A DNA stretch of 64,000 nt from Hemiscyllium ocellatum (lineage: Eukaryota). Within the stretch, counting starts at the first letter, position 1. Every line of letters starts with the position of its first letter. The stretch covers positions 248,001 through 312,000 of the forward strand of contig NW_026869095.1 in assembly GCF_020745735.1 (NCBI RefSeq), given 5' to 3'. Below, in pieces: positions 4,977-47,323 of the stretch. The translations under genes were made by a program, and so were the position numbers. A model generated the notes under the pieces. The model worked only from the letters and a program-made list of their open reading frames with translations. It was not told the origin of the DNA and searched no databases.

Positions 4977-6059
4977 CTACAGGCCTGAGGTCTTTGTCTT
5001 CTCGTTGACCGTCGGTAGTGTGGGCTTGGGCTGAGTGGAGTCCAGGGAGCTTTCCTCCTCGAAGGCGCCCTCCAGCAGCCCCCTCAGGCCTCTGCGGAGC
5101 TGCCCACGGCCCTGGCGCCCGGCGAAGGCGTACAGGAAGGGGTTGAGGCAGCTGTTGAGGTAGGCCAGGCTGGTGGTGGCGGGGTCGACCGTCCGGGCCC
5201 AGTGCTGGAGCCGCCAGTCGCCGGACAGGAGGAGCAGGCCCACCACATGGTAGGGGGTCCAGCACAGGAAGAAACCCAGCAGCACCACCAGCAGGAGGCG
5301 GCAGGGCCTCCGGCTCTGAGGCTGGGAGAAGCGGGAGGCCCAGAGGCTGTGGGCGATGAGGCCGTTGCTGGCGGCGATGACCACCAGGGGGAGCAGGAAG
5401 GCGAAGACGAAGCGGGTCAGGCTGACGGCGCGCTGCCTAGGCCCCAGCTCCTCCCCGTAGTCGGCGACGCACCGGACGGGGAACCCGGCAGCGAACTGCA
5501 CCGTCCTCCGGTACAGGAGGCTGGGGAGGGACATCAGCAGGGCCAGGCCCCAGGCTGAGGCGCAGGAGAGCCGGGCCCGGCCCAGAGAGCGCTGCCTGCG
5601 GAACCAGAGAGGCAGCAGCGCCGCCAGGCAGCGGTCCACCGAGATGCCGGTCAGTACGAAGACGCTGGCGTACATGCTGAGCACGGTGAGCCAGGGCAGC
5701 AGCTTGCAGAGGAAGGGGCCGAAGGGCCACTGGTAGTCCACGGCCAACTGGGTGAGCAGGAAGGGCAGGGTGAGGCACAGCAGGAGGTCGGCCACCGCGA
5801 GGTTGAGGAACCAGACGGTGACTGGGCGCCTGGCCATCAGGAAACCCACGATCCACAACACGGCGATGTTGCCGGGGACGCCCAGGGCAAAGATGGCAGC
5901 GTAGGCCACCATGGACACGACGGTGAGGGACTTCCTGATGGGCTCGGTGTGGTTCAACAGCGCCTCCTCCTGGTGGTCACGGTAGTCCTCTTCCTCCTCC
6001 TTCCCCCAGTCCTCGTCCCAAAGGCTCCAGTTGCCCAGCAGAGTGCCATTGACGTCCAT
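4977..6059 (-). CDS. Anaphylatoxin chemotactic receptor-like class A GPCR (C5aR1/C3aR family), copy 1, 360 aa
   Basis: 7TM with GVPGN, WFLNLAVAD, WPFG, MYASVF, DRC, CWTPYH, NSCLNPFLY; acidic N-terminus with Tyr (EEEEDY); short ECL2; ATG at 6059 three nt after acceptor TTTGTCTCCTTTCAG; DHX34 nearby as at human C5AR1/C5AR2. Confidence 0.92.
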   Translation of the reverse strand: MDVNGTLLGNWSLWDEDWGKEEEEDYRDHQEEALLNHTEPIRKSLTVVSMVAYAAIFALGVPGNIAVLWIVGFLMARRPVTVWFLNLAVADLLLCLTLPFLLTQLAVDYQWPFGPFLCKLLPWLTVLSMYASVFVLTGISVDRCLAALLPLWFRRQRSLGRARLSCASAWGLALLMSLPSLLYRRTVQFAAGFPVRCVADYGEELGPRQRAVSLTRFVFAFLLPLVVIAASNGLIAHSLWASRFSQPQSRRPCRLLLVVLLGFFLCWTPYHVVGLLLLSGDWRLQHWARTVDPATTSLAYLNSCLNPFLYAFAGRQGRGQLRRGLRGLLEGAFEEESSLDSTQPKPTLPTVNEKTKTSGL

Positions 6060-6109
6060 CACCTGAAAGGAGACAAACTGGGCAGGGTTCAACCAATCAG
6101 CTGGCACCC

Positions 6110-7330
6110 CGCAGCGCTGACCCTCCCACAGCACCCACTCCCTCAGCGCTGACCCTCCCACAGCGCCCACTCCCTCAGCACTGACCCTCCCACAGCACCC
6201 ACTCCCTCAGCACTGACCCTCTCACAGCGCCCACTCCCTCAGCGCTGACCCTCCCACAGCACCCACTCCCTCAGCACTGACCCTCTCACAGCGCCCGCTC
6301 CCTCAGCACTGACCCTCCCACCCCACCCGCTCCCTCAGCACTGACCCTCCCACAGCACCCACTCCCTCAGCACTGACCCTCCCACAGCACCCACTCCCTC
6401 AGCACTGACCCTCCCACAGCGCCCGCTCCCTCAGCACTGACCCTCCCTCAGCACTGACCCTCCCACAGCACCCACTCCCTCAGCACTGACCCTCCCACAG
6501 CACCCGCTCCCTCAGCGCTGACCCTCCCACAGCGCCCACTCCCTCAGCACTGACCCTCCCTCAGCGCCCACTCCCTCAGCACTGACCCTCCCACAGCGCT
6601 CACTCCCTCAGCACTGACCCTCCCACAGCACCCACTCCCTCAGCACTGACCCTCCCACAGCACCCACTCCCTCAGCACTGACCCTCTCACAGCACCCACT
6701 CCCTCAGCACTGACCCTCCCACAGCACCCACTCCCTCAGCACTGACACTCCCACAGCGCCCACTCCCTCAGCACTGACCCTCCCACAGCACTGACCCTCC
6801 CACAGCACCCGCCCCCTCAGCACTGACCCTCCCACAGCACCCACTCCCTCAGCACTGACCCTCCCACAGTGCCCACTCCCTCAGCACTGACCCTCCCACA
6901 GCAATGACCCTCCCACAGTGCCCACTCCCTCAGCACTGACCCTCCCACAGCACTGACCCTCCCACAGCACCCGCTCCGTCGGCACTGACCCTCCCATAGT
7001 GCCCACTCCCTCAGCACTGACCCTCCCACAGCACCAGCTCCCTCAGCACTGACCCTCCCACAGTGCACACTCCCTCAGCACTGACCCTCCCACAGTGCAC
7101 ACTCCCTCAGCGCTGACCCTCCCGCAGCACCCACTCCCTCAGCACTGACCCTCCCGCAGCACCCGCACCCTCAGCACTGACCCTTCCACAGCACCCACTC
7201 CCTCAGCGCTGACCCTCACTCAGCACCGGCTCCCTCAGCACTGACCCTCCCACAGTGCACACTCCCTCAGCGCTGACCCTCCCACAGCACCCACTCCCTC
7301 AGCACTGACCCTCCCACAGCGCCCGCCCCC
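6110..7330. repeat. 32-bp minisatellite (CCCTCAGCACTGACCCTCCCACAGCACCCACT) in the presumed GPCR intron
   Basis: About 38 tandem units, C-rich on plus. Confidence 0.95.
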
Positions 7331-7646
7331 TCCACTATCTCTCTGTCCTACCTGACCCACGGGACGGAAGAAAGGGTGTCACTCTCAGCCAGGCCTGTGT
7401 GGGAATTTGGTTTGTCTTTGGGATCTTGCTGTTCCTCCCTCTCCCTCCGTTCGCAATGCTCCCCGTCGTCCGGAGTGATGACCTTAAACACTCTCTTCCC
7501 CTTCCCCACACCCCTCCCTTTCCTGTGCAAGGCCTCGGCTCCCTTTGGTCACTCTCACACCTCGCGCGCCCCCAATCCCCCACCCCCACTGCTCCCCTCG
7601 TTGTGAGGCCACTGGGGTGGGCCTGTGAGTCCTGGGGCAGGGGCGC

Positions 7647-7765
7647 ACTCACTGGAACGTCAATCCGCGTCCTCCCCAGGACTCAGGCATCAGGAGGAAA
7701 TGAATCACAGAGCCCTTGGGAGGCTGTGTCATGACTGACAATTGCAACAGTTTCCTGAACTAAAA
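7647..7765 (-). promoter_or_regulatory. Candidate upstream exon 1, splice donor and proximal promoter of GPCR copy 1
   Basis: Minus-strand CA|GTGAGT donor at 7652; nearby GAGGAAATGAA (ETS/PU.1-like) and ATTGCAAC (C/EBP-like); this receptor family usually has a small first exon. Confidence 0.45.
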
Positions 7766-8107
7766 AGCTGTCGCAGACAGAAAAGCAAATGTGAACGACA
7801 GAGGATACTCTGAGGGGAGACGCCGAACCACGAGAGGGATCCACCTTTTAGAGTAGGCCCCGCCGGGCCTAGTGTCTCTCCCTGAGGCCTGTGGCCCAGG
7901 AGTTAGCCTCTTGCCTGTTCGGAAGGTTGAGGCCTCGCCTCAGTGACCAACTCAAGGGCTTCCGTTGCATCTCAATTGGGATGTCATTGCCCCCTGGGGT
8001 AAGAGTTCAGGAAAGGACCGGTCAAGAGAGCGGCCTCCGCCGTTGCTAACGAACATCCACACCGAGCGGAGAATGGGCTCGGCGCACAGACACACCCAGG
8101 ATCGCAC

Positions 8108-11100
8108 TCTCTATAAGTGCTCAGGGTATTTAATACAGTAATTTCCCAATAGCGGTCTCTCTGTATCCATGCTCAGGGTATTTAATTCAGTAATTACCCA
8201 GCAGCGGTCTCTCTCTATGAGTGCTAAGTGTATTTAATTCATTAATTACCCAGCAGCGGTCTCTCTCTATAAGTTCTTAGGGTATTTAATACAGTAATTA
8301 CCCAGCAGCGGTCTCTCTCTATTTGTGCTCAGGGTATTTAATTCAGTTATTACCCAGCAGCGGTCTCTATAAGTGCTCAGGTTATTTAATTCAGTAGTTA
8401 CCCAGCATCAGTCTCCCTCTATAAGTGCTCAGGGTATTTAATTACAGGAATTACCCAGCAGCCTCTCTCTCTATTTGTGCTCAGGGTATTTAATTCAGTT
8501 ATTACCCAACAGCGGTCTCTCTCTATAAGTGCTCAGGATATTTAATTACAGTAATTACCCAGCAGCCTCTGTCTCTATTAGTGCTCAGGGTATTTAATTC
8601 AGTTATTACCCAGCAGCGGTCTCACTCTATAAGTGCTCAGGGTATTTAACTCAGTAATTACCCAGCAGCGGTCTCCCTTTATAAGTGCTCAGGGTATTTT
8701 ACTCAGTAATTACCCAGCAGCAGTTTCTCTATATAAGTGCTCAGGGTATTGAATACAGTAATTACACAGCAGCGGTCTCTCTATGTGTGCTCAATGTATT
8801 TATCACAGTAATTACCCAGCAGCGGTCTGCCGTTATAAGTGCTCAGGGTATTTAACTCAGTAAGTACGCAGCAGCAGTCTCACTTTGTAAGTGCTCAGGG
8901 TATTTAATACAGTAATTACCTAGCAGCGGTCTCTCACTATAAGTGCTCAAGGTATTTAATTCAGTAATTACCCACTAGCTGTCTCTCTCTATGAGTGCTC
9001 AGGGTATTTAATACAGTAATTACCCAGCAGCGGTCTCTGTCTATAAGTGCTCAGGGTATTTAATTCATTAATTACCCAGCAGCGGTCTCACTCTATATGT
9101 GCTCAGGGTATTTATTTCAGTAATTAACCAGCAGCGGACTCCCATTATAAGTGCTCAGGGTATTTAATACAGTATTTACCCAGCAGCTGTCTCTCTCTGT
9201 AAGTGCTCAGGGTATCTCATACAGTAATTACCCAGCAGCAGTCTCTCTCTATAAGTGTTCAGGGTATTTAACTCAGTAATTACCAAGCAGCGGTCTCTCT
9301 CTATTAGCACTCAGGGTATTTAATTCAGTAATTACCCAGCAGCGGTCTCACTCTATAAGTGCTCAGGGTATTTAACTCAGTAATTACTCAGCAGCAGGCT
9401 CCCTTTAGAAGTGCTCAGGTATTTACCTCAGAAATTACCCAGCAGCAGTCTCTCTCTATTTGTGCTCAGGGTATTTAATTCAGTAATTACCCAGCAGCGG
9501 TCTCTCTCTATGAGTGCTAAGTGTATTTAATTCATTAATTACCCAGCAGCGGTCTCTCTCTATAAGTTCTTAGGGTATTTAATACAGTAATTACCCAGCA
9601 GCGGTCTCTCTCTATTTGTGCTCAGGGTATTTAATTCAGTTATTACCCAGCAGCGGTCTCTATAAGTGCTCAGGTTATTTAATTCAGTAGTTACCCAGCA
9701 TCAGTCTCCCTCTATAAGTGCTCAGGGTATTTAATTACAGGAATTACCCAGCAGCCTCTCTCTCTATTTGTGCTCAGGGTATTTAATTCAGTTATTACCC
9801 AACAGCGGTCTCTCTCTATAAGTGCTCAGGGTATTTAATTACAGTAATTACCCAGCAGCCTCTGTCTCTATTAGTGCTCAGGGTATTTAATTCAGTTATT
9901 ACCCAGCAGCGGTCTCACTCTATAAGTGCTCAGGGTATTTAACTCAGTAATTACCCAGCAGCGGTCTCCCTTTATAAGTGCTCAGGGTATTTTACTCAGT
10001 AATTACCCAGCAGCAGTTTCTCTATATAAGTGCTCAGGGTATTGAATACAGTAATTACACAGCAGCGGTCTCTCTATGTGTGCTCAATGTATTTATCTCA
10101 GTAATTACCCACCAGCGGTCTACCGTTATAAGTGCTCAGGGTATTTAACTCAGTAAGTACGCAGCAGCAGTCTCACTTTGTAAGTGCTCAGGGTATTTAA
10201 TACAGTAATTACCTAGCAGCGGTCTCTCACTATAAGTGCTCAAGGTATTTAATTCAGTAATTACCCACTAGCTGTCTCTCTCTATGAGTGCTCAGGGTAT
10301 TTAATACAGTAATTACCCAGCAGCGGTCTCTGTCTATAAGTGCTCAGGGTATTTAATTCATTAATTACCCAGCAGCGGTCTCACTCTATATGTGCTCAGG
10401 GTATTTATTTCAGTAATTAACCAGCAGCGGACTCCCATTATAAGTGCTCAGGGTATTTAATACAGTATTTACCCAGCAGCTGTCTCTCTCTGTAAGTGCT
10501 CAGGGTATCTCATACAGTAATTACCCAGCAGCAGTCTCTCTCTATAAGTGTTCAGGGTATTTAACTCAGTAATTACCAAGCAGCGGTCTCTCTCTATTAG
10601 CACTCAGGGTATTTAATTCAGTAATTACCCAGCAGCGGTCTCACTCTATAAGTGCTCAGGGTATTTAACTCAGTAATTACTCAGCAGCAGGCTCCCTTTA
10701 GAAGTGCTCAGGTATTTACCTCAGAAATTACCCAGCAGCAGTCTCTCTCTATCAGTGCTCAGGGTATTTAATACAGTAATTACCCAGCAGCAGTCTCTCT
10801 CTATAGGTGTTCAGGGTATTTAATACAGTAATTACCCAGCAGCGGTCTCTCTCCATAAGTGCTCAGGGTATTTAATACAGTAATTACCCAGCAGCGGTCT
10901 CTCTCTATAAGTGCTCAGGGTATTTAATACAGTAATTACCCAGCAGCGGTCTCCCTTTATTTGTGCTCAGGATATTTAATTCAGTAATTACCCAGCAGCA
11001 GTCTCTCCCTCTGAGTTCTCAGGGAATTTAATTCAGTAATTACCCAGCAGTGATCTCTCTCTATAAGTGTTACGGGTATTTAATTCATTAATTACCCAGC

Positions 11101-14100
11101 AGTGCTCTCTCTCCATAAGTGCTCTGGATATTTGATTCAGTAATTACCCAGCAGCGGTCTTTCTCTATAAGTGCTCAGGGTACTTAATTTTGTAATTACC
11201 CAACAGCGATCTCTCTCCATAAGTGCTCAGGGTATTTAATTCAGTTATTTCCCAGCAGCGGTCTCTCTCTACAAGTGGTCAGTGCATTTAATACAGTATT
11301 TACCCAGTAGTGGTCTCCCTTTATAAGTGCTCAGGGTATTTTACTCAGTAATTACCCAGCAGCAGTTTCTCTATATAAGTGCTCAGGGTATTGAATACAG
11401 TAATTACACAGCAGCGGTCTCTCTATGTGTGCTCAATGTATTTATCTCAGTAATTACCCACCAGCGGTCTACCGTTATAAGTGCTCAGGGTATTTAACTC
11501 AGTAAGTACGCAGCAGCAGTCTCACTTTGTAAGTGCTCAGGGTATTTAATACAGTAATTACCTAGCAGCGGTCTCTCACTATAAGTGCTCAAGGTATTTA
11601 ATTCAGTAATTACCCACTAGCTGTCTCTCTCTATGAGTGCTCAGGGTATTTAATACAGTATTTACCCAGCAGCGGTCTCTGTCTATAAGTGCTCAGGGTA
11701 TTTAATTCATTAATTACCCAGCAGCGGTCTCACTCTATATGTGCTCAGGGTATTTATTTCAGTAATTAACCAGCAGCGGACTCCCATTATAAGTGCTCAG
11801 GGTATTTAATACAGTAATTACCCAGCAGCTGTCTCTCTCTGTAAGTGCTCAGGGTATCTCATACAGTAATTACCCAGCAGCAGTCTCTCTCTATAGGTGT
11901 TCAGGGTATTTTACTCAGTAATTACCAAGCAGCGGTCTCTCTCTATTAGCACTCAGGGTATTTAATTCAGTAATTACCCAGCAGCGGTCTCACTCTATAA
12001 GTGCTCAGGGTATTTAACTCAGTAATTACGCAGCAGCGGTTTCTCTCTCTTTAAGTGCTCAGGGTTTTTAGTACAGTAATTTCCCAACAGTGGTCTGTCT
12101 CTATAAGTGCTCTGGCTATTTAATTCAGTAAATACCCAGCAGATGTCTCACTTTGTAAGTGCTCAGGGTATTTAATACAGTAATTACCTAGCAGCGGTCT
12201 CTCACTATAAGTGCTCAAGGTATTTAATTCAGTAATTACCCACTAGCTGTCTCTCTCTATGAGTGCTCAGGGTATTTAATACAGTAGTTACCCAGCAGCG
12301 GTCTCTCTGTATAAGTGCTCAGGGTATTTAATACAGTAATCACTCAACAGCATTCTCTCACTATTAGTGCTCAGGGTATTTAATTCAGTAATTTCCCACT
12401 AGCGGTCTCTCTCTATGAGTACTCAGGGTATTTAATTCAGTAATTACCCAGCCGCGGTCTCTCTGTATCCATGCTCAGGGTATTTAATTCAGTGATTACC
12501 CAGCAGCGGTCTCGCTCTATAAGTGCTCAGGGTATTTAACTCAGTAATTACCCAGCAGCGGTTTCTCTCTCTATAAGTGCTCAGGGTTTTTAATACAGTA
12601 ATTTCCCAACAGTGGTCTGTCTCTATAAGTGCTCAGGGTATTTAATTCAGTTATTACCCAGCAGCGGTCTCACTCTATAAGTGCTCAGGGTATTTAACTC
12701 AGTAATTACTCAGCAGCAGACTCCCTTTAGAAGTGCTCAGGTATTTACCTCAGAAATTACCCAGCAGCAGTCTCTCTCTATAAGTGCTCAGGGTATTTAA
12801 TACAGTAATTACCCAGCAGCAGTCTCTCTCTATAGGTGTTCAGGGTATTTAATACAGTAATTACCCAGCAGCGGTCTCTCTCTATAAGTGCTCAGGGTAT
12901 TTAATACAGTAATTACCCAACAGCGGTCTCCCTTTATTTGTGCTCAGGATATTTAATTCAGTAATTACCCAGCAGCGGTCTCTCCCTCTGAGTTCTCAGG
13001 GAATTTAATTCAGTAATTACCCAGCAGCAGTCTCTCTCTATAAGTGCTCAGGTTATTTAATTCAGTAGTTACCCAGCATCAGTCTCCCTCTATAAGTGCT
13101 CAGGGTATTTAATTACAGTAATTACCCAGCAGCCTCTCTCTCTATTTGTGCTCAGGGTACTTAATTTTGTAATTACCCAACAGCGGTCTCTCTCTATAAG
13201 TGCTCAGGATATTTAATTACAGTAATTACCCAGCAGCCTCTGTCTCTATTAGTGCTCAGGGTATTTAACTCAGTTATTACTCAGCAGCAGACTCCCTTTA
13301 GAAGTGCTCAGGTATTTACCTCAGTAATTACCCAGCAACAGTCTCTCTCTATAAGTGCTCAGGGTATTTAATTCAGTAGTTACCCAGCATCAGTCTCCCT
13401 CTATAAGTGCTCAGGGTATTTAATACAGTAATTACCCAGCAGTGGTCTCCCTTCATAAGTGCTCAGGGCATTTAATACAGGAATTACCCAGCAGCGGTCT
13501 CTCTGTATAAGTGCTCAGGGTACTTAATTTTGTAATTACCCAGCAGTGGTCACTCTCTATAAGTGCTCAGGGTATTTAATACAGTAATTACCCAACAGTG
13601 GTCTCCATTTATTCGTGCTCAGGGTATTTAATTCAGTAATTACCCAGCAGCAGTCTCTCCCTATGAGTTCTCAGGGTATTTAATTCAGTAATTACCCAGC
13701 AGCAGTCTTTCTCTATAAGTGCTCAGGGTACTTAATTTTGTAATTACCCAACAGCGATCTCTCTCCATAAGTGCTCAGGGTATTTAATTCAGTTATTTCC
13801 CAGCAGCGGTCTCTCTCTATAAGTGGTCAGTGCATTTAATACAGTATTTACCCAGCAGCGGTCTCCCTTTATAAGTGCTCAGGGTATTTTACTCAGTAAT
13901 TACGCAGCAGCGGTCTCTCTCTATTAGCACTAAGGGTATTTAATTCAGTAATTACCCAGCAGCAGTCTCTCTCTATAAGTGCTCAGGGATTTTAATACAG
14001 TAATTTCCCAATAGCGGTCTCTCTCTATAAGTGCTCTGGGTATTTAATTCAAAATTACCCAGCAGCAGTCTCCCTTATTAAGTGCTCAGGGTATTTAATA

Positions 14101-15556
14101 CAGTAATTACCCACTAGCTGTCTCTCTCTATGAGTGCTCAGGGTATTTAATTCAGTAACTACCCAGCAGCTGTCTCTCTCTATAAGTGCTAAGGGTATTT
14201 AATTCATTAATTACCCAGCAGCAGTCTCAGTCTATATGTGCTCAGGGTATTTATTTCAGTAATTAACCAGCAGCGGACTTCCGTTATAAGTGCTCAGGGT
14301 ATTTCATACAGTAATTACCCAGCAGCAGTTTCACTCTATAGGTGCTCAGGGTATTTAATACAGTAATTACCCAGCAGCGGCCTCTCTGTATAAGTGCTCA
14401 GGGTATTTAATACAGTATTTACCCAGCAGCAGTCTCTCTGTATAAGTGCTCAGGGTATTTCATACAGTAATTACCCAGCAGCAGTCTCACTCTATAGGTG
14501 TTCAGGGTATTTAATGCAGTAATTACCCAACAGCGGTCTCCCTTTATTTGTTCTCAGGGTATTTAATTCAGTAATTACCCAGCAGCAGTCTCTCCCTATG
14601 AGTTCTCAGGGTATTTAATTCAGTAATTACCCAGCAGTGATCTCTCTCTATAAGTGCTAAGGGTATTTAATTCATTAATTACCCAGCAGTGCTCTCCCTC
14701 CATAAGTGCTCTGGGTATTTTATTCAGTAATTACCCAGCAGCGGTCTTTCTCTATAAGTGCTCAGGGTACTTAATTTTGTAATTACCCAACAGCGATCTC
14801 TCTTCATAAGTGCTCAGGGTATTTAATTCAGTTATTTCCCAGCAGCGGTCTCTCTCTATAAGTGGTCAGTGCATTTAATACAGTATTTACCCAGCAGCGG
14901 TCTCCCTTTATAAGTGCTCGGGGTATTTTACTCAGTAATTGCCCAGCAGCAGTTTCTCTATATAAGTGCTCAGGGTATTGAATACAGTAATTACACAGCA
15001 GCGGTCTCTCTATGTGTGCTCAATGTATTTATCTCAGTAATTACCCACCAGCGGTCTCCTGTTATAAGTGCTCAGGGTATTTAACTCAGTAATTACGCAG
15101 CAGCGGTCTCTCTCTATAAGTGCTCAGGGTATTTAATACAGTAATTTCCCAATAGCGGTCTCTCTCTATAAGTGCTCTGGGTATTTAATTTAGAAATTAC
15201 CCAGCAGCAGTCTCACTTTGTAAGTGGTCAGGGTATTTAATACAGTAATTACCCAGCAGCGGTCTCTCACTATAAGTGCTCAAGGTATTTAATTCAGTAA
15301 TTACCCACGAGCTGTCTCTCTCTGTGAGTGCTCAGGGTATTTAATACAGTAATTACCCAGCAGCGGTCTCTCTCTATAAGTGCTCAGGGTATTTAACTCA
15401 GTAATTACCGTGCAGCGGTCTCTCTCTCGAAGTGCTCAGGGTTTTTAATATAGTAATTTCCCAATAGCGGTCTCTCTCTATAAGTGCTCTGGGTATTTAA
15501 TTCAGAAATTACCCAGTGCATTTTATACAGTATTTAGCCAGCAGCGGTCTCCCTTT
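8108..15556 (+). repeat. 52-bp satellite array with higher-order repeats (about 1.3 kb period)
   Basis: Same unit; marker TATGTGTGCTCAATG at 8782, 10075, 11424, 15011. Confidence 0.97.
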
Positions 15557-21030: not shown

Positions 21031-21160
21031 CTATTTAAATTTAACAGCTATTATGAATGATTTGGTGAGTGTGGTGGGGGTGGGTGACCCACTTTACCCA
21101 AGTCTTGGGAAGAGCACTATAGACTCAGACTTGCTGGGTCGCCGCCACCTTGGATTCCCC

Positions 21161-23288: not shown

Positions 23289-23289
23289 G

Positions 23290-33160: not shown

Positions 33161-33163
33161 GTA

Positions 33164-36100: not shown

Positions 36101-39100
36101 CAGTCTCTCTCTATAAGTCCTCGGGGTATTTAATATAGTAATTCCCCAGCAGCAGTCTCTCTCTATAAGTGCTCAGAGTATTTAACTCACCAATTACCTA
36201 GCAGCGGTCTCTCACTATAACTGCTCAGGGTATTTAATACAGTAATTACCCAGCAGCAGTCTCCCTTCATAAGTGCTCAGGGTATTTAAGACAGGAATTA
36301 CCCAGCAGTGGTCTCTCTGTATTAGTGCTCAGGGTATTTAATACAATAATTACCCAGCAGCGGTCTCTCTCTATAAGTGCTCAGGGTATTTAATACAGTA
36401 ATTAACCAGCAGCTGTCTCTCTGTATAAGTGCTCAGGGTATTTAATTCAGTAATTACCTAGCAGCAGTTTCTCTCTATAAGTGCTCAGAGTATTTAATAC
36501 AGTAATTACCCAGCAGCTGTCCCCTTTTATAAGTGCTCAGGGTATTTAATACAGTAATTACCCAGCAGCGGACCCCCTTCATAAGTGCTCATGGTATCAA
36601 ATTCAGTTATTTCCCAGCAGCGTTCTCTCTCTATAAGTGCTCAGAGTATTTAACTCAGTAATTACCCACTAGCGGTCTCTCTCTATGAGTGCTCAGGGTA
36701 TTCAATACAGTATTTACTCAGCAGCAGTCTCTCTCTGTAAGTGCTCAGGGTATTTATCTCAGTAATTACCCAGCAGCGGTCTCTCTGTATAAGTGCTCAG
36801 GGTATTTAATTCATTTATTTCCCAGCAGCGTTCTCTCTCTACAAGTGCTCAGGGTATTTAACTCAGTAATTACCCAGCAGCGGTCTCCCTTTATAAGTGC
36901 TCAGGGCATTTAATTCAGTAATTACCCAGCAGCGGTCTCTTTCTATAAGAGCTCAGGGTATTTAACTCAGTAATTACCCAGCAGCAGTCTGTCTCTATAA
37001 GTCCTTGGGGTATTTACTACAGTAATTACCCAGCAGCGGTCCCCGTTTATAAGTGCTCAGGGTATTTACTACAGTAATTACCCAGCAGCGGTCCCCGTTT
37101 ATAAGTGCTCAGGGTATTTAATACAGTAATTACCCAGCAGTGGTCTCTCTGTGTAAGCGCTCAGGGTATTTAATTCAGTAATTACCCAGCAGCGGTCTGT
37201 CTTTATATATGGTCAGGGTATTTAATTCAGTAATTACCCAGCAGGGGTCCCCCTTCATAAGTGCTCAGGGTATTTAATACAGTAATTACCCAGCAGCGGT
37301 CTCTCTGTGTAAGTGCTCAGAGTATTTAACTCAGTAATTACCCAGCCGCGGGCTCTCTGTGTAAGTGCTCAGGGTATTTAATACAGCAATCACCCCGCAG
37401 CGGTATCTCTCTATAAGTGCTCAGGGTATTTAATTCAGTAATTACCCAGCAGTGATCCCCCTTCATAAGTGCTGAGGGTATTTCATACAGTAATTACCCA
37501 GCAGCGGTCTCTCTGTGTAAGTGCTCAGTGTATTTAATACAGTAATTACCCAACAGCGGTCTCTCTCTATTAGTGCTCAGGGTATTTAATTCAGTAACTA
37601 CCCAGCAGCGGTCCCCCTTCATAAGTGCGCAGGGTGTTTAATACAGTAATTACCCAGCAGCGGTCTCCCTTTATAAGTGCTCAGGGTATTTAACTCAGTA
37701 ATTACCCAGCAGCGGTCTCCCTTTATAATTGCTCAGGGTATTTAATACAGTAATTACCCAGCAGCAGTCTCTCTCTATAAGTGCTCAGGGTATGTAACTC
37801 AGTAATTACCCAGCAGCTGTCTGTCTCTATAAGTGCTCAGGGTATTTAATACAGTAATTACCCAGCAGCGGTCTGTCTCTATAAGTGTTCAGGGTATTTA
37901 AGTCAGTAATTATCCAGCAGTGGTCTCCCGTTATAAGTGCTCAGGGTATTTAATTCAGTAATTACCCAGCAGCGATCCCCCTTCATAAGTGCTGAGGGTA
38001 TTTCATACAGTAATTACCCAGCAGCGGTCTCTCTGTGTAAGTGCTCAGTGTATTTAATACAGTAATTACCCAACAGCGGTCTCTCTCTATTAGTGCTCAG
38101 GGTATTTAATTCAGTAACTACCCAGCAGCGGTCCCCCTTCATAAGTGCGCAGGGTGTTTAATACAGTAATTACCCAGCAGCGGTCTCCCTTTATAAGTGC
38201 TCAGGGTATTTAATTCAGTAATTACCCAGCAGCGGTCCCTCTTTATAAGTGCTCAGGGTATTTAATACAGTAATTACCCTGCAGCAGTCTCTCTCTATAA
38301 GTGCTCAGGGTATGTAACTCAGTAATTACCCAGCAGCGATCTCTCTCCATAAGTGCTCAGGGTATTTAATTCAGTTATTTCCCAGCAGCGTTCTCTCCCT
38401 ACAAGTGCTCAGGGTATTTAATTCAGTTATTTCCCAGCAGCGTTCTCTCCATACAAGTGCTCAGTGTATTTAATACAGTATTTACCCAGCAGCGGTCTCT
38501 CTCTATAAGTGCTCAGGGTATTTAATACAGTAATTAGCCAGCAGCAGTCTCCTACTATAAGAGCTCAGGGTATTTAATCCAGTAATTACCCAGCAGCGGT
38601 CTCTCTGTATAAGTGCTCTGGGTATTTAATACAGTAATTACCCAGCAGCGGTCTCTCTCTATAAGTGCTCAGGGTATTTAATACAGTAATCAGCCAGCAG
38701 CAGTCCCCCTTTATAAGTGCTGAGGATATTTAATACAGAAATTGCCCAGCAGCAGTCTCCCTTAATAAGTTCTCAGGGTATTTAATTCAGTAATTACCCA
38801 GCATTGGTCTCTCTCTATAAGTGCTCAGGGTATTTAACTCAGTAATTACCCAGCAGCGGTCTCCCTTTATAAGTGCTCAGGGCATTTTATTCAGTAATTA
38901 CCCAGCAGCAGTCTCCCTCTATAAGTGCTCAGGGTATTTAATACAGTAATTACCCGCAGCGGTCTCCCTCTATTAGTGCTCAGGATATTTAATCCAGTAA
39001 TTACCCAGCAGCAGTCTCCCTCTATAAGTGCTCAGGGTATTTAATACAGTAATTACCCAGCAGCAGTCTCTCTGTATAAGTGCTCTGGGTATTTAATTCA

Positions 39101-42100
39101 GTAATTACCCAGCAGCGGTCTCTCTCTATAAGTGCTCAGTGTATTTAATACAGTAATTACCCAGCAGCAGTCCCCCTTTATAAGTGCTGAGGATATTTAA
39201 TACAGAAATTGTCCAGCAGAGGTCTCCCTTGATAAGTTCTCAGGGTATTTAATACAGTAATTACCCAGCATTGGTCTCTCTCTATAAGTGCGCAGGGTAT
39301 TTAATTCAGTAATTACCCAGCATTGGTCTCTCTCTATAAGTGCTCAGGGTATTTAACTCAGTAATTACCCAGCAGCGGTCTCCCTTTATATGTGCTCAGG
39401 GTATTTTATTCAGTAATTACCCAGCAGTGGTCTCTCTCTATAAGTGCTCAGGGTATTTAATACAGGAATTACCCAGCAGCGGTCTCTCTCTATAAGTGCT
39501 CAGGGTATTTAATACAGTAATTACCCAGTAGCGGTCTCTCTCTATAAGTGCTCAGGGTATTTAATACAGGAATTACCCAGCAGCGGTCTCTCTCTATTAG
39601 TGCTCAGGGTATTTAATACAGTAATTACCCAGCAGCGGACCCCCTTCATAAGTGCTCAGGGTATTTAACTCAGTAATTACCCAGCAGCGATTTCTCTCCA
39701 TAAGTGCTCAGGGTATTTAATTCAGTTATTTCCCAGCAGCGTTCTCTCTCTACAAGTGCTCAGTGTATTTAATACAGTATTTACCCAGCAGCAGTCTCTC
39801 TCTATAAGTGCTCAAGGTATTTATCTCAGTAATTACCTAGCAGCGGTCTCTCTCTCTATAATTGCTCAGGGTATTTAGTACAGTAATTACCCAGCAGCAG
39901 TCTCCCTTTATAAGTGCTCAGGGTATTTAATACAGTAATTATCCAGCAGCCGTCTCTCTCTATAAGTGCTCAGAGTATTTAACTCAGTAATTACCTAGCA
40001 GCAGTCTCTCTCTATAAGTCCTCGGGGTATTTAATATAGTAATTCCCCAGCAGCAGTCTCTCTCTATAAGTGCTCAGAGTATTTAACTCACCAATTACCT
40101 AGCAGCGGTCTCTCACTATAACTGCTCAGGGTATTTAATACAGTAATTACCCAGCAGCAGTCTCCCTTCATAAATGCTCAGGGTATTTAAGACAGGAATT
40201 ACCCAGCAGTGGTCTCTCTGTATTAGTGCTCAGGGTATTTAATACAATAATTACCCAGCAGCGGTCTCTCTCTATAAGTGCTCAGGGTATTTAATACAGT
40301 AATTAACCAGCAGCTGTCTCTCTGTATAAGTGCTCAGGGTATTTAATTCAGTAATTACCTAGCAGCAGTTTCTCTCTATAAGTGCTCAGAGTATTTAATA
40401 CAGTAATTACCCAGCAGCTGTCCCCTTTTATAAGTGCTCAGGGTATTTAATACAGTAATTACCCAGCAGCGGACCCCCTTCATAAGTGCTCATGGTATCA
40501 AATTTAGTTATTTCCCAGCAGCGTTCTCTCTCTATAAGTGCTCAGAGTATTTAACTCAGTAATTACCCACTAGCGGTCTCTCTCTATGAGTGCTCAGGGT
40601 ATTCAATACAGTATTTACCCAGCAGCAGTCTCTCTCTATAAGTGCTCAGGGTATTTATCTCAGTAATTACCCAGCAGCGGTCTCTCTCTATAAGTGCTCA
40701 GGGTATTTAATACAGTAATTACCCAGCAGCGGTCTTTCTCTCTCTATAAGTGCTCAGGGTATTTAACTCAGTAATTACCCAGCAGCGGTCTCTCTCTATC
40801 AATGCAAAAGTTATTTAACTCAGTAATTGCCCAGCAACAGACTCCCTTTATAAGGACTCAGTGTATTCAATACAGCAAATACCCAGCAGCGGTCCCCCTT
40901 TATAAGTGCTCAGGGTATTTAATACGGTAATTACCCTGCAGCAGTACCCCTTTATAAGTGCTGAGGATATTTAATACAGTAATTACCCAGCAGCGGTCCC
41001 CCTTCATAAGTGCTCAGGGTATTTAATTCAGTTATTTCCCAGCAGCGTTCTCTCTCTATAAGTGCTCAGAGTATTTAACTCAGTAATTACCCACTAGCGG
41101 TCTCTCTCTATGAGTGCTCAGGGTATTCAATACAGTATTTACCCAGCAGCAGTCTCTCTCTATAAGTGCTCAGGGTATTTATCTCAGTAATTACCCAGCA
41201 GCGGTCTCTCTCTATAAGTGCTCAGGGTATTTAATACAGTAATTACCCAGCAGCGGTCTTTCTCTCTCTATAAGTGCTCAGGGTATTTAACTCAGTAATT
41301 ACCCAGCAGCGGTCTCTCTCTATCAATGCAAAAGTTATTTAACTCAGTAATTGCCCAGCAACAGACTCCCTTTATAAGGACTCAGTGTATTCAATACAGC
41401 AAATACCCAGCAGCGGTCCCCCTTTATAAGTGCTCAGGGTATTTAATACGGTAATTACCCTGCAGCAGTACCCCTTTATAAGTGCTGAGGATATTTAATA
41501 CAGTAATTACCCAGCAGCGGTCCCCCTTCATAAGTGCTCAGGGTATTTAATTCAGTAATTACCCAGCAGCGGTCTCTCTGTATAAGTGCTCAGGGTATTT
41601 GATACAGTAATTACCCAGCAGTGGTCTCTCTCTATAAGTGCTAAGGGTATTTAATTCAGTAATTACCCAACAGCGATCTCTCTCAATAAGTGATCAGGGT
41701 ATTTAATACAGTAATTACCCAACAGCGGTCTCTCTCAATAAGTGCTCAGGGTATTTAATTCAGTAATTACCCAACAGCGGTCTCTCTCAATAAGTGATCA
41801 GGGTATTTAATACAGTAATTACCCAACAGCGGTCTCTCTCAATAAGTGCTCAGGGTATTTAATACAGTAATTACCCAGCAGCGGTCTTTCTCTCTCTATA
41901 AGTGCTCAGGGTGTTTAACTCAGTAATTACCCAGCAACAGACTCCCTTTATAAGGACTCAGTGTATTCAATACAGCAAATACCCAGCAGCGGTCCCCCTT
42001 TATAAGTGCTCAGGGTATTTAATACGGTAATTACCCAGCAGCAGTACCCCTTTATAAGTGCTGAGGATATTTAATACAGTAATTACCCAGCAGCGGTCTC

Positions 42101-42550
42101 TCTCTATAAGTGCTCAGGGCATTTAATTCAGTAATTACCCAGCAGTGGTCTCTCTCTTTTAGTGCTCAGGGTATTTAATACAGTAATTACCCAGCAGCGG
42201 TCTCTCTCTATAAGTGCTCAGGGTATTTAATACAGTAATTACCCAGCAGCAGTCTCTCTCTATAAGTGCTCAGGGTATTTAATTCAGTAATTACTCAGCA
42301 GTGGTCTCCCTTTATAAGAGCTCAGGGTATTTAATTCAGTAATTACCCTACAGCGGTCTCCCTTTATAAGTGTTCAGGGTATTTAATACAGTAATTACCC
42401 AGCAGCGGTCTCTCTGTATAAGTGCTCAGAGTATGTAATACAGTAATTACCCAGCAGTGGTCTCTCTCTATAAGTGCTCAGGGTATTTAATTCAGTAATT
42501 ACCCAGCAGCGGTATCTCTCTATAAGTGCTCAGGGTATTTAATTTAGTAA
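33164..42550 (+). repeat. 52-bp satellite array, about 9.4 kb, with higher-order block duplications
   Basis: Markers recur at offsets of about 3901, 3331 and 524 bp. Confidence 0.97.
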
Positions 42551-43632
42551 CACCAACAATAACTCCCTCCTTTAAGAAGTGTATTTTCTTTCTATGATGC
42601 GAGGTTTTAAGGCAGTGTTGAAGAGCAGGTACCAGAACCACGTTTGAGATTTTTAAAGAATGGGTTGTAACAACAGATGCAGCCTGGCTGGGTGTGGTGA
42701 AATTCCCATTGGATCAAGGATTTTTAGATTTGGCTTTTGAGGTCTTGAAGAGGTAGAAGACATTGTTTTCCCCTCTCTCTCGCTCTCTTTCTCTCAAATG
42801 CAGCTGAAACCTATTTTCCACATTAACCTGTTAATGGGATCTTACTACATCGGAAACAGTACAGCTCCGATGGGCCAAAGAGCCTTCTCTGTGCTTTAGA
42901 TCTCCACCTTTCTACTGCATTGAGGAAGACAGACTACTGCTGGCTGTTGTTGAATTGACTATCCAGAGCACTTATAAGGAAGGACTGCTGCTTGGGGGTT
43001 AATTGTTAAATTGAATATCTCGAGTACTTAGAACAGTTCCCTAGCAGCAGCCTCTCTTTATGTGAACTATTTAAAGCATTTACAAAGAGAGATTGTTGCT
43101 GTGGGATTGTCGCATTGTTAAGTCACAGCGATGACCCATTCTGTTAATAAACCAAGCAGCCAGAAAAGCCGACCTTGCCTTGTAATTGTAAAAGTTGTGA
43201 GTGATAGAGAACTCCCCAAATTCTACTATTTGAAGAAAATATCAATTTAATTCCTTAACTCGAAAAGTGAACATTAAGCAACAACTATTCAGACCTCTAA
43301 GCCGCCCCCCCGCCTTTCTCTGAACTGCTCTATAACAATATGCTGTTCCAGTAAAAGACTTATTAAAATTACATCGACTTAATTTCAAAACCACTCAGCT
43401 GCTGTTGTCTTTGCTGTTTATCTTCTCCTGCCTGAAGATCCTCTTCCTACTTTTTACTGCAAATATATGAAAAGATGCCTTTGAGAGAGAGGGTTTCCTA
43501 ATTTCCTGGGTCTCTCTATCTCTCTCTCTCTCTCTCGGAGGCCATGACTTGGAGACGCCGGTGTTGGACTGGGGTGTACAAAGTTAAAAATCACACAACA
43601 CCAGGTTATAGTCCAACAGGTTTAATTGGAAG

Positions 43633-43667
43633 CACTAGCTTTCGGAGCGCTGCCCCTTCATCAGGTG
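43633..43667 (-). ncRNA. Minimal hammerhead motif (duplicate of 2371-2405) in a Penelope-like end
   Basis: Identical to copy 1. Confidence 0.75.
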
Positions 43668-46240
43668 GTTGAGGAATACACGATTGTAAGACACAGAATT
43701 TATAGCAAAAATGTACAGTGTGATGGAGCTGAAATTATACATTGAAAAATATCTTGGTTGTTTGTTAAGTCTGTCATCTGTTAGAATGACCATGTTAGTT
43801 TCACTTCTTTCATGTGTAATTCACAAAACTTTTTTTAAAAGTTACATTCTCAGGTTCACTTTAACAATTGGTGATAGTCCAGATAATGTGTTGAAGGTGT
43901 TAGCTCCACTGTGTGCTGTTGTCTGTGCTGTAATGTCTAGACTGATTCTAATCTAAAAAGTGAGTTAACAGAGACTTACATGGATTCGTGCAGGTTTTGA
44001 GCAAAGTATAATGTAACTCAGCAAGGACAAATTCACCCCACACCAACGTATATGTGTATGTGTGAATGTGTGAGTGTGAATGTCTGGGTGTGTGTGTGGG
44101 TGAGTGTGAGTATGGGTGTGTGGGTGTGTTTGTGTGAGTGTGAGTGTTTGTGTGTGGATGTGTGTGTGGGTGCATGTATGAGTGTGTGGGTGTGTGAGAG
44201 TGTGGGTGTGAGCGTGTGTGCCTAAGGTGCAGGGTTGTGAGTGTCTGTGAGGGAGAGTGTATATGTGTGTGTGTGTGTGAGAGAGAGAGAGTGTAAAGGG
44301 GTCTAAGTCTGTGGGAGGGTGCATGTGTGAGTGTGTGTGTCTGTAGGAGTGTGTATGTGTGTTTGTGTGTGTGTGTGGCTGTGAGTGTGTTTGTGTGAGT
44401 GTATGGGTGTGTATGTGTGTCCGTGTGTGTGTGAGTGTCTGAGTGGGTGTGAGTGTGTGGGTGTGTGTGGTTGTGTGTGTGTCTGTGTAGATGTGTGTGT
44501 GTCTGTGAGTGTCTGTGTGGTTGTGTGTGTGTCTGTGTAGATGTGTGTGTGTGTCTGTCTGTGTAGATGTGTGTGTGTGTCTGTGTGTCTGTGTAGATGT
44601 GTGTGTGTGTCTGTGTAGATGTGTGTGTGTGTGTCTGTGTAGATGTGTGAGTGTGTGTGTGGATGTGTGTGTGTGTGTCTGTGTAGATGTGTGAGTGTGT
44701 GTGAGTGTCTGTGTGGTTATGTGTGTGTCTGTGTAGATGTGTGTGGATGTGTGTGTGTGTGTGAGTGTCTGTGTGGTTGTGTGTGTGTCTGTGTAGATGT
44801 GTGTGTGTGTCTGTGTANNNNNNNNNNNNNNNNNNNNNNNNNNNNNNNNNNNNNNNNNNNNNNNNNNNNNNNNNNNNNNNNNNNNNNNNNNNNNNNNNNN
44901 NNNNNNNNNNNNNNNNNNNNNNNNNNNNNNNNNNNNNNNNNNNNNNNNNNNNNNNNNNNNNNNNNNNNNNNNNNNNNNNNNNNNNNNTGTCTGTGTAGAT
45001 GTGTGAGTGTCTGTGTGGTTGTGTGTGNNNNNNNNNNNNNNNNNNNNNNNNNNNNNNNNNNNNNNNNNNNNNNNNNNNNNNNNNNNNNNNNNNNNNNNNN
45101 NNNNNNNNNNNNNNNNNNNNNNNNNNNNNNNNNNNNNNNNNNNNNNNNNNNNNNNNNNNNNNNNNNNNNNNNNNNNNNNNNNNNNNNNNNNNNNNNNNNN
45201 NNNNNNNNNNNNNNNNNNNNNNNNNNNNNNNNNNNNNNNNNNNNNNNNNNNNNNNNNNNNNNNNNNNNNNNNNNNNNNNNNNNNNNNNNNNNNNNNGTGT
45301 GTGGATGTCTGGGGCGGGGTTTCTCTCCATAGCAATTGCTCTGTCGCCAATTTTCAAAATGTCTTACTTTTTTATATCCCCAACATTGGATCGTGTCATT
45401 TGTTCAAGGTTGGCAAAACAATAAATTCAAACTCATTGGGTTTTAGTATCCTGGGGCATAATTTAAACTGGTTGGTTAAATTCAAATTGTTGTCAAAACA
45501 GCAACCAGAACTCAGGTCTCCATTTCATAGCCAAGTGCCCATTTAAAGTTGGTGAGTATACTACTGTTGCAGACGGTGCGTTCCACGCCCCCTCCTACTC
45601 TCTGAGTAAAGAAACTCCCTCTGCCATCTGTCCGATATCTATCACCCCCTCAGTTTATAGCTGTGTTCCCTCATGCAAGCCATCACCATCCGAGGGAAAA
45701 GGCTGTCACTGTCCACCCTATCTAACCCTCGGATTATCTTCCATGTCTCTAGGGGTAGGGCATATAGGGCGTAGGTTTAGGGTGAGAGGAGAAAGATATA
45801 AAAGAGACCTAAGGGGCAACTTTTTCACGCAGATGGTGGTACGTGTATAGAATGAGCTGCCAGAGGAAGTGGTGGAGGTTGGTACAATTGTAACATTTAA
45901 GAGGCATTTGGAGGGGTATATGAATAGGAAGGGTTTGGAGGGAGATGGGCCGGGTTCTGGCAGGTGGGACGAGATTGGGTTGGGATATCTGGGTCGGTAT
46001 GAACGGGTTGGACCGAAGGGTCTGTTTCTGTGCTGTACATCTCTATGACTCTATGATTTACAAAGAGAGGTTGTTGCTGGGGGATGGTTAAATTGACCAT
46101 CTCGAGTACCTATAAAGAGGGAGGTGGGGGTGAGGGTGTTAAGTTGGCCATCTGGAGACTTCCGAGCATCCAGAGGAGAGGTCCTGGTGGGAGCGGCCGA
46201 GTCAAATTGTCACACAAGACGGGTCCACCGATCCAGAGAG

Positions 46241-47323
46241 CTACAGGCCTGAGGTCTTTGTCTTCTCGTTGACCGTCGGTAGTGTGGGCTTGGGCTGAGT
46301 GGAGTCCAGGGAGCTTTCCTCCTCGAAGGCGCCCTCCAGCAGCCCCCTCAGGCCTCTGCGGAGCTGCCCACGGCCCTGGCGCCCGGCGAAGGCGTACAGG
46401 AAGGGGTTGAGGCAGCTGTTGAGGTAGGCCAGGCTGGTGGTGGCGGGGTCGACCGTCCGGGCCCAGTGCTGGAGCCGCCAGTCGCCGGACAGGAGGAGTA
46501 CGCTCACCACATGGTAGGGGGTCCAGCACAGGAAGAAACCCAGCAGCACCACCAGCAGGAGGCGGCAGGGCCTCCGGCTCTGAGGCTGGGAGAAGCGGGA
46601 GGCCCAGAGGCTGTGGGCGATGAGGCCGTTGCTGGCGGCGATGACCACCAGGGGGAGCAGGAAGGCGAAGACGAAGCGGGTCAGGCTGACGGCGCGCTGC
46701 CTAGGCCCCAGCTCCTCCCCGTAGTCGGCGACGCACCGGACGGGGAACCCGGCAGCGAACTGCACCGTCCTCCGGTACAGGAGGCTGGGGAGGGACATCA
46801 GCAGGGCCAGGCCCCAGGCTGAGGCGCAGGAGAGCCGGGCCCGGCCCAGAGAGCGCTGCCTGCGGAACCAGAGAGGCAGCAGCGCCGCCAGGCAGCGGTC
46901 CACCGAGATGCCGGTCAGTACGAAGACGCTGGCGTACATGCTGAGCACGGTGAGCCAGGGCAGCAGCTTGCAGAGGAAGGGGCCGAAGGGCCACTGGTAG
47001 TCCACGGCCAACTGGGTGAGCAGGAAGGGCAGGGTGAGGCACAGCAGGAGGTCGGCCACCGCGAGGTTGAGGAACCAGACGGTGACTGGGCGCCTGGCCA
47101 TCAGGAAACCCACGATCCACAACACGGCGATGTTGCCGGGGACGCCCAGGGCAAAGATGGCAGCGTAGGCCACCATGGACACGACGGTGAGGGACTTCCT
47201 GATGGGCTCGGTGTGGTTCAACAGCGCCTCCTCCTGGTGGTCACGGTAGTCCTCTTCCTCCTCCTTCCCCCAGTCCTCGTCCCAAAGGCTCCAGTTGCCC
47301 AGCAGAGTGCCATTGACGTCCAT
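46241..47323 (-). CDS. Anaphylatoxin chemotactic receptor-like GPCR (C5aR1/C3aR family), copy 2, 360 aa
   Basis: As copy 1 except YHVVSVLL instead of YHVVGLLL. Confidence 0.92.
   Translation of the reverse strand: MDVNGTLLGNWSLWDEDWGKEEEEDYRDHQEEALLNHTEPIRKSLTVVSMVAYAAIFALGVPGNIAVLWIVGFLMARRPVTVWFLNLAVADLLLCLTLPFLLTQLAVDYQWPFGPFLCKLLPWLTVLSMYASVFVLTGISVDRCLAALLPLWFRRQRSLGRARLSCASAWGLALLMSLPSLLYRRTVQFAAGFPVRCVADYGEELGPRQRAVSLTRFVFAFLLPLVVIAASNGLIAHSLWASRFSQPQSRRPCRLLLVVLLGFFLCWTPYHVVSVLLLSGDWRLQHWARTVDPATTSLAYLNSCLNPFLYAFAGRQGRGQLRRGLRGLLEGAFEEESSLDSTQPKPTLPTVNEKTKTSGL

What the first reader, a model, noticed from the sequence alone, without database searches (positions are those of the whole stretch)
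4977..47323. Twin anaphylatoxin receptors differing only at the TM6 ligand-pocket rim (G6.55S, L6.56V)
Seen: the two 360-aa proteins are identical except for two adjacent residues. These come from three substitutions within 6 bp (5235/46499, 5237/46501, 5240/46504; GGC CTG vs AGC GTA). Knowledge: counting from P6.50 in CWTPYH these are positions 6.55 and 6.56. Position 6.55 faces the orthosteric pocket in class A peptide receptors and is Gly in human C5aR1, C5aR2 and C3aR as I recall them. Inference: a paralog pair homogenised by conversion, or duplicated recently, that keeps a difference only at a specificity site, as red/green opsins do. This could be a two-specificity complement-sensing system in a shark.
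Basis: partly seen in the sequence, partly recalled or inferred. Interest (0 to 1): 0.72.

Follow-up and report, generated by a model that had tools for sequence, protein, structure and literature searches.

The report
Young shark anaphylatoxin-receptor gene array
A shark scaffold carries three almost identical copies of a complement-peptide (C3a/C5a-type) receptor gene in a satellite-flanked tandem array, and the newest copy differs from its neighbour by one 3-base mutation cluster at a conserved ligand-contact glycine; this looks like ordinary gene-family turnover, not a shown two-specificity system.

Summary
Two intact 360-aa minus-strand ORFs (4977-6059 and 46241-47323) differ only at 5235/5237/5240, giving G274S and L275V at TM6 positions 6.55 and 6.56. 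The N runs lie about 940 bp 3' of the stop codon in a TG microsatellite, so neither ORF is affected.

The "twin" framing is wrong. The same 449-kb unplaced scaffold holds a third intact copy (A, 98% nt, Gly-Leu) 42 kb upstream, and a 47% paralogue a further 42 kb upstream.

Gly-Leu is ancestral: copy A, both Chiloscyllium orthologues and the paralogue all have it. Ser-Val is derived in copy C.

Copies B and C are otherwise identical across all unique sequence from 1289 to 7471. Three changes within 6 bp cannot be independent (P about 1e-4). The third change is not needed for the amino-acid change. No donor for the cluster exists in the assembly.

The best reading is one multinucleotide mutation in a very young duplicate. 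Gly6.55 is present in all 68 anaphylatoxin-type homologues found, and in human C5aR1 it contacts C5a Arg74, so a functional effect is plausible.

Selection, pharmacology and cis-phasing are untested.

The parts
4977..6059 (-). Copy B of the anaphylatoxin-type receptor gene. 360-aa intact ORF, stop included, with Gly274-Leu275 (6.55/6.56).
   Evidence: Pfam 7tm_1 E 1.2e-53. Best solved relatives are human C3aR (3e-67) and C5aR1 (7e-64).
46241..47323 (-). Copy C of the same gene. 360-aa intact ORF with derived Ser274-Val275.
   Evidence: Identical to copy B except at CDS nt 820, 823 and 825.
5235..5240 (-). Ancestral state of the variant cluster in copy B (coding strand GGC CTG).
   Evidence: The same state is found in copy A, in Chiloscyllium punctatum and C. 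plagiosum, and in paralogue L004.
46499..46504 (-). Derived 3-base cluster in copy C (coding strand AGC GTA), giving G6.55S and L6.56V.
   Evidence: The 30-mer is unique in the 3.98-Gb assembly at up to 3 mismatches. No 8-mer spanning the three bases occurs elsewhere in the window.
1..8107 (.). Duplicated segment, B side. It begins 238 bp left of the window, inside the 52-bp satellite.
41263..49373 (.). Duplicated segment, C side. Homology to the A and B units ends at 49373, so this is a terminal partial unit of the array.
7953..8107 (.). Divergence spike at the right edge of the duplication (49219-49373 in copy C). Nine C-specific substitutions lie where A and B are identical.
6108..7332 (.). 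32-bp minisatellite (about 38 units) that begins 49 bp upstream of the ATG of copy B. Its counterpart at copy C is 47372-48598.
8107..15516 (.). 52-bp satellite array flanking the gene segment. Further arrays lie at 1-1288, 21161-23283 and 33169-42550. These are the likely substrate for unequal exchange.
   Evidence: The left boundary of the B-C tract lies inside such an array.
2791..4032 (.). TG microsatellite 3' of copy B, containing the two N masks. Its counterpart at copy C is 44053-45296.

Best explanation
The window covers the distal end of a young tandem array of anaphylatoxin-type chemoattractant GPCR genes on unplaced scaffold C1709.

Layout of the array:
- a divergent paralogue, then copy A, then copy B, then copy C
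- the period is about 41.3 kb
- the gene segments are flanked by 52-bp satellite arrays

Copies A and B diverged about 2% ago as whole 41-kb units.

Copies B and C share an 8.3-kb tract with no difference in any unique sequence from 1289 to 7471 apart from the cluster. This tract comes from a very recent satellite-mediated duplication, or from a long conversion or unequal exchange that overwrote an older distal copy.

After that, one complex (multinucleotide) mutation in copy C changed GGC CTG to AGC GTA. It replaced the family-invariant Gly6.55 with Ser and Leu6.56 with Val. Gly6.55 helps form the sub-pocket for the ligand's C-terminal arginine.

Shown here: the anatomy of the array, the polarity of the change, that it is a single event, and that Gly6.55 is conserved.

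Inferred: that the assembly is right about two loci in cis, and that G6.55S modestly retunes or weakens binding of the terminal Arg. There is no evidence that selection keeps the difference.
For: Anatomy of the array:
- Four receptor genes lie on C1709, at 168.9, 211.0, 253.0 and 294.2 kb, and nowhere else in the genome.
- The A and B units are 97.7% identical over 16.8 kb and colinear through the 41-kb period.
- The B-C tract runs from contig 247763 to 256107.

Site patterns from the three-way comparison, in 2801 unique bases:
- A against B=C: 68 sites
- C against A=B: 3 sites, which are the cluster
- B against A=C: 0 sites

Polarity: Gly-Leu is found in copy A, two Chiloscyllium orthologues, six other elasmobranch homologues and paralogue L004.

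A single event:
- Three of six substitutions within 6 bp has P about 1e-4.
- The CTG to GTA change includes one base that is not needed for Leu to Val.

No template: the 30-mer is unique in the genome at up to 3 mismatches, and there is no local 8-mer match.

The genes look functional:
- All ORFs are intact, and pN/pS between A and B is 0.35.
- R5.42 (R216), Y6.51 (Y270) and D7.35 (D292) align with the human C3aR residues named as the conserved Arg-binding triad.

The site matters:
- 6.55 is Gly in all 68 anaphylatoxin-type hits.
- C5aR1 Gly262(6.55) contacts C5a Arg74, and that contact is lost with C5a-desArg (PMC7615941).

Against a simple haplotype artefact:
- Copy C has a different right flank from copy B.
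- The B interval is a 2-5% diverged copy of the A interval, far more than the 0.1% between B and C.

Read-set words: runs X1, X25 and X26 hold 100% of the sampled 31-mers of copy C's CDS. This probably includes words that span the cluster, which is weak evidence against a consensus error.
Against:
- The scaffold is unplaced and rich in satellites, which is where assemblies err most.
- Three-substitution multinucleotide events are rare among mutations. Finding one among only about four B-C events, and at a ligand-contact residue, is a coincidence that selection or an unseen donor would explain more neatly.
- The divergence spike at 7953-8076 shows that copy C has an older layer. The patch could therefore be a relic rather than a new mutation.
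Confidence: 0.55

Rival explanations
1. Assembly or haplotype artefact. Ser-Val and Gly-Leu are alleles of one locus, or the array's copy number is mis-assembled. A switch between haplotypes inside the 9.4-kb 52-bp satellite would lay two alleles in tandem. Alternatively, the cluster is a consensus error.
For: - B-C divergence (about 0.1% plus microsatellite and minisatellite length differences) is in the range of allelic heterozygosity.
- The scaffold is an unplaced 449-kb piece dominated by satellites.
- Read evidence could not be obtained.
- Runs X4 and X5 hold 0.98 rather than 1.00 of copy C's sampled words. This could reflect absence of the Ser-Val words in some samples.
Against: - Sequence is continuous from copy B to copy C. 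The N runs are masks and do not lie between the unique interval and the genes.
- Copy C's right flank differs from copy B's.
- The B interval is 2-5% diverged from the A interval, so it is a real separate unit that needs a gene segment at each end.
- Three runs from two studies hold all sampled words of copy C's CDS.
- Three substitution errors within 6 bp, in sequence that is neither a homopolymer nor a repeat, are unusual for modern consensus.
Confidence: 0.2
2. Adaptive specificity difference. Concerted evolution keeps the copies identical, while selection preserves Ser-Val in copy C. The result would be two receptors with different ligand preference, for example a different dependence on the ligand's terminal Arg.
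For: - The only coding difference falls on a residue that contacts C5a Arg74 in C5aR1 and is otherwise invariant Gly in the clade.
- Ser, Val, Ala and Thr occur at 6.55 in the sister chemerin-receptor-like family, so the fold tolerates the change.
- The edge spike suggests an older copy C overwritten by conversion.
- Copy A versus B/C also differs at pocket-facing 7.38 and 7.39.
Against: - This is one event in one copy. One of its three changes is silent in effect, and L6.56V is conservative.
- No comparative or population evidence supports it. No other elasmobranch homologue has Ser6.55.
- Flanking non-coding DNA is as identical as the CDS, so the homogenisation or duplication is so recent that there has been almost no time for selection to be visible.
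- pN/pS between B and C (0.70, from 3 bases) carries no information.
Confidence: 0.12
3. Relic patch. Copy C was an older, roughly 6% diverged copy. A long conversion from B overwrote it, and patchy mismatch repair left a 6-bp island of the old sequence.
For: - Nine C-specific differences lie in 155 bp at 7953-8107, where A and B are identical.
- Mismatch density also rises gradually at the left edge, inside the satellite.
Against: - Even at 6% divergence, 3 differences in a given 6 bp are unlikely (about 0.4%).
- A single island surviving among several hundred converted mismatches is hard to obtain without selection.
- An 8-kb tract fits unequal exchange better than heteroduplex repair.
Confidence: 0.08

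Closest known systems
Human C5aR1 (CD88)
   Same: - Class A GPCR that aligns in one stretch over residues 18-356 (E 7e-64).
- Short ECL2.
- Acidic N-terminus with a tyrosine (EEEEDY, residues 21-26). From my own knowledge, this resembles the C5aR1 'site 1'.
- R5.42, Y6.51, D7.35 and G6.55 are present.
   Different: - DRC rather than DRF at 3.49-3.51.
- The tree gives no orthology. The shark clade sits in a polytomy with tetrapod C5aR1 and C3aR.
- The ligand has not been tested.
Human C3aR
   Same: - Best solved relative by score (3e-67).
- Identical CWTPYH motif and DRC.
- NCBI names the shark orthologues 'C3a anaphylatoxin chemotactic receptor-like'.
   Different: - Lacks the roughly 170-residue ECL2 of mammalian C3aR. 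The alignment splits into 39-186 and 210-354 around it.
- From my own knowledge (Boshra et al. 2005, cited in PMC7565592), trout and Xenopus C3aR also lack much of this loop. Its absence therefore does not exclude C3a as the ligand.
Tandem birth-and-death arrays of chemoattractant GPCRs, such as the FPR and chemokine-receptor clusters and the adjacent C5AR1/C5AR2 pair in mammals
   Same: - Several paralogues lie head-to-tail.
- There is a mix of old (47%) and very young (98-99.7%) copies.
- Repeats mediate the exchange.
- The few differences lie in extracellular or pocket positions.
   Different: - The youngest pair differs by one mutation cluster only.
- No divergence of function has been shown.
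Red/green opsin arrays
   Same: Tandem near-identical GPCR genes that are subject to gene conversion.
   Different: In opsins the retained differences are several spectral-tuning sites. They are shared across individuals and species and have measured phenotypes. Here a single derived event is seen in one assembly, with no comparative support.

Membership tests
Class A (rhodopsin-like) GPCR | 7tm_1 profile and hallmark motifs (D/ERx at 3.49-3.51, CWxP, NPxxY) | tested here: met
   Pfam PF00001 E 1.2e-53 over residues 63-310. DRC at 142-144, CWTPYH at 266-271 and NPFLY at 306-310.
Anaphylatoxin receptor group (C3aR/C5aR1/C5aR2) | Closest relatives by sequence and tree placement | tested here: met
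   The top solved relatives are C3aR, C5aR1 and C5aR2, ahead of CMKLR1 and the FPRs. In the tree the protein falls in a clade with tetrapod C3aR and C5aR1, apart from the chemerin-receptor-like proteins, with support 91/89.
Anaphylatoxin receptor group (C3aR/C5aR1/C5aR2) | Conserved pocket for the ligand's C-terminal Arg: R5.42, Y6.51 and D7.35 | tested here: met
   R216, Y270 and D292 align with C3aR R340, Y393 and D417 (alignment, positions). The triad is defined in bioRxiv 10.1101/2023.01.18.524551.
C3aR (mammalian type) | Very large second extracellular loop | tested here: not met
   The alignment to human C3aR skips about 170 receptor residues between query positions 186 and 210. The shark ECL2 is short.
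C5aR1 | Orthology to tetrapod C5aR1 | tested here: inconclusive
   The shark clade, the L004/ray clade, tetrapod C3aR and tetrapod C5aR1 form an unresolved polytomy. No C5aR2 sequences were in the tree.
Anaphylatoxin receptor group (C3aR/C5aR1/C5aR2) | Activation by C3a or C5a | not testable with these tools
   Needs a ligand assay.
Opsin-like 'conversion plus retained tuning site' system | The difference is maintained across individuals or species despite homogenisation of the flanks | tested here: not met
   Ser6.55 is absent from copy A, the Chiloscyllium orthologues and all other elasmobranch homologues retrieved. Individuals could not be compared.

The most novel reading that the evidence does not exclude
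Copy C's Ser6.55-Val6.56 is held by selection against ongoing homogenisation. If so, this shark would have two anaphylatoxin-type receptors that read the ligand's C-terminal arginine differently, for example intact versus desArg peptide, or C3a versus C5a. It would be a natural one-residue switch at the Arg74 sub-pocket.
Probability: 0.1. Interest if true: 0.55.

Novelty: new member of a known kind. Interest (0 to 1): 0.25.

Why it matters
If the array is real, it is a clean snapshot of how immune chemoattractant receptor families grow. Satellite arrays mediate the duplication, and the first coding change lands on a ligand-contact glycine. That offers a natural G6.55S variant for testing how anaphylatoxin receptors recognise the terminal arginine.

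It also shows that elasmobranchs have two anaphylatoxin-type receptor lineages side by side. Neither has a mammalian-type C3aR loop, which bears on when C3a and C5a sensing separated.

As it stands, it is ordinary gene-family turnover. The two-specificity idea has no support beyond the position of the change.

Tried and rejected
After that I sent none of those letters to any search tool. This covers the identical letters at 5124-5163 in copy B and CDS nt 897-936 (aa 299-312). It also ruled out exact-protein look-ups, structure prediction and fold searches of the full receptor. All listed runs were stored as Logan contigs anyway, so depth could not have been read.

2. Micro-conversion from a paralogue was rejected. 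The 30-mer around the cluster matches only the three copies at up to 3 mismatches, and the 47% paralogue has Gly-Leu.

3. Local template switching was rejected. No 8-mer or longer word spanning the three derived bases occurs on either strand of the window.

4. Independent point mutations were rejected (P about 1e-4).

5. A gap disrupting the gene was rejected. The N runs are masks about 940 bp 3' of the stop codon.

6. pN/pS between B and C is uninformative, because it rests on 3 bases.

7. The findings index held nothing on this gene beyond the edge-spike note.

8. A literature search for 'C5aR1 G262' gave nothing useful. 'Gly262' did.


Full report
**Observation**

The window holds two intact minus-strand ORFs, at 4977-6170 and 46241-47434. 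Taken from the first ATG, both encode 360 residues (4977-6059 and 46241-47323).

I aligned 1-3551 with 41263-44817 and 4033-8107 with 45297-49373. Inside the CDS there are exactly three substitutions: 5235/46499, 5237/46501 and 5240/46504. On the coding strand this is GGC CTG versus AGC GTA, giving G274S and L275V.

**Gap test**

The N runs sit in a TG microsatellite, 944 bp 3' of each stop codon. They have nearly the same lengths in both copies (172+269 and 170+269). A 40-base island separates the two runs in each copy. They therefore behave as masks, not scaffold joins. Neither ORF is touched, and the flanks stay colinear.

**Extent and pattern of the duplication**

At 97% identity or above, the only long self-matches in the window are the two halves of one 8.1-kb segment. 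At a fixed offset, the near-identity starts 238 bp left of the window, inside a 52-bp satellite. It ends at 8107/49373.

In unique sequence between 1289 and 6107, the three clustered bases are the only substitutions. Three singletons follow at 7472, 7538 and 7766, and then nine substitutions at 7953-8076. The remaining differences are unit-number changes in the TG microsatellite and in the 32-bp minisatellite. That minisatellite begins 49 bp upstream of the ATG.

**Not twins**

The window is G000:C1709:248001-312000, part of a 449-kb unplaced scaffold. A six-frame search of the whole 3.98-Gb assembly finds:
- a third intact copy (A) at 211009-212088, 98% identical in nucleotides and about 42 kb upstream of copy B
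- a 47% paralogue (L004) at 168855-169769, a further 42 kb upstream
- no other close copy anywhere

I fetched 160-248 kb of the scaffold. The entire 41-kb unit is repeated: the A unit matches the B unit at 97.7% over 16.8 kb and stays colinear through the satellites. Copy C is a terminal partial unit, and after 49373 its flank is unrelated to either.

**Polarity**

Copy A has Gly-Leu. So do the orthologues of Chiloscyllium punctatum and C. plagiosum (86% identity), six other elasmobranch homologues and paralogue L004. Ser-Val is therefore derived in copy C.

Three-way site patterns, in 2801 unique bases:
- A against B=C: 68 sites
- C against A=B: 3 sites, which are the cluster
- B against A=C: 0 sites

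At the right edge (7333-8107) the pattern is mosaic, with counts of 7, 10 and 2. Nine of the C-specific sites lie in the last 155 bp, where A and B are identical.

**Nature of the cluster**

Three of six substitutions falling within 6 bp by chance has P about 1e-4, so this is one event or an artefact. Of the three changes, the third-position G to A in CTG to GTA is not needed for Leu to Val. That argues for one complex mutation rather than stepwise selected changes.

I looked for a template and found none:
- The 30-mer is unique in the genome at up to 3 mismatches.
- The divergent paralogue has Gly-Leu.
- No 8-mer spanning the three bases occurs elsewhere in the window on either strand.

Multinucleotide mutations, and raised mutability of segmental duplications, are documented (PMC13102968).

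**What the gene is**

- Pfam 7tm_1 matches at E 1.2e-53.
- The best solved relatives are human C3aR (3e-67), C5aR1 (7e-64) and C5aR2 (4e-59), ahead of CMKLR1 and the FPRs.
- The alignment to C3aR skips its roughly 170-residue ECL2, whereas C5aR1 aligns end to end.
- R216(5.42), Y270(6.51) and D292(7.35) match the conserved triad that holds the ligand's terminal Arg.

A maximum-likelihood tree of 38 proteins places copies A, B and C with the Chiloscyllium proteins in a shark-only clade. That clade forms an unresolved polytomy with tetrapod C3aR, tetrapod C5aR1 and a second elasmobranch clade containing L004. Membership of the anaphylatoxin group is met. Assignment to C3aR or C5aR1 is not.

pN/pS between A and B is 0.35, and all ORFs are intact, so the genes look functional.

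**Does the site matter?**

Among 121 homologues, 6.55 is Gly in all 68 anaphylatoxin-type proteins. Ser, Val, Ala and Thr occur only in the chemerin-receptor-like fish proteins. Position 6.56 is Leu (63 proteins) or Val (44), and Gly-Val is the commonest pair and the human C3aR state.

Yadav et al. 2023 (PMC7615941) report that Thr261(6.54) and Gly262(6.55) of C5aR1 make contacts with C5a that are lost with C5a-desArg. G274S would therefore put a side chain into the terminal-Arg sub-pocket. An effect on potency or on dependence on the Arg is plausible, but this is inference.

**Artefact question**

I could not test the reads. I worked beside those places from then on.

Structural arguments against a simple haplotype duplication:
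- Copy C's right flank differs from copy B's.
- The B interval is 2-5% diverged from the A interval, while B and C differ by about 0.1%.

Weak support that the Ser-Val string is in real reads: three runs from two studies hold all sampled 31-mers of copy C's CDS.

An allelic or mis-assembled origin keeps about 20% probability.

**Verdict**

It is not supported as a two-specificity system.

The most likely account is one complex mutation in the youngest member of a three-copy, satellite-mediated tandem array. This is a new member of a known kind and of modest interest.

Noticed in passing
window 4977-4979 and 46241-46243; L003 (G000:C1709:211009-212130): Copies B and C share a derived GAG to TAG nonsense change at codon 361. 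It removes the last 13 residues, which copy A (373 aa) and both Chiloscyllium orthologues keep. The downstream codons in B and C still read the old tail.
   Followed up: partly
G000:C1709:211009-212130 (copy A) versus window 4977-6059: Copy A differs from B and C by 9 amino acids. Five cluster in TM1 (residues 46-61). Two lie at TM7 positions 7.38 and 7.39 (Ala-Ile in A and Chiloscyllium, Thr-Thr in B and C), and 7.39 usually faces the pocket in class A receptors.
   Followed up: partly
window 4499-4795 and 45763-46059: A SINE-like element of about 295 bp lies 3' of the gene. It is 93-95% identical to dozens of places across the genome and is not aligned at that position in copy A.
   Followed up: no
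window 16055-19548, minus strand: LINE remains in the inter-copy interval: ORFs with a reverse transcriptase domain (RVT_1, 4.7e-36) and an endonuclease domain (Exo_endo_phos, 4.5e-15).
   Followed up: no
window 6108-7332, 47372-48598, 57005-57976 and 60605-61999: A 32-bp minisatellite begins 49 bp upstream of each receptor ATG. It recurs in inverted orientation distal to copy C. A splice-acceptor-like tttcag sits 3 bases before the ATG, so an upstream leader exon is possible.
   Followed up: no
G000:C1709:168855-169769 (L004): A second elasmobranch anaphylatoxin-type receptor lineage (47% identity) lies next to the array. It groups with ray and sawfish proteins that are variously named C3aR-like and C5aR1-like. 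Neither lineage has the mammalian C3aR loop.
   Followed up: partly
window 51513-59183: Seven further N runs of irregular length (131-653) lie distal to copy C, among AG microsatellite and minisatellites.
   Followed up: no
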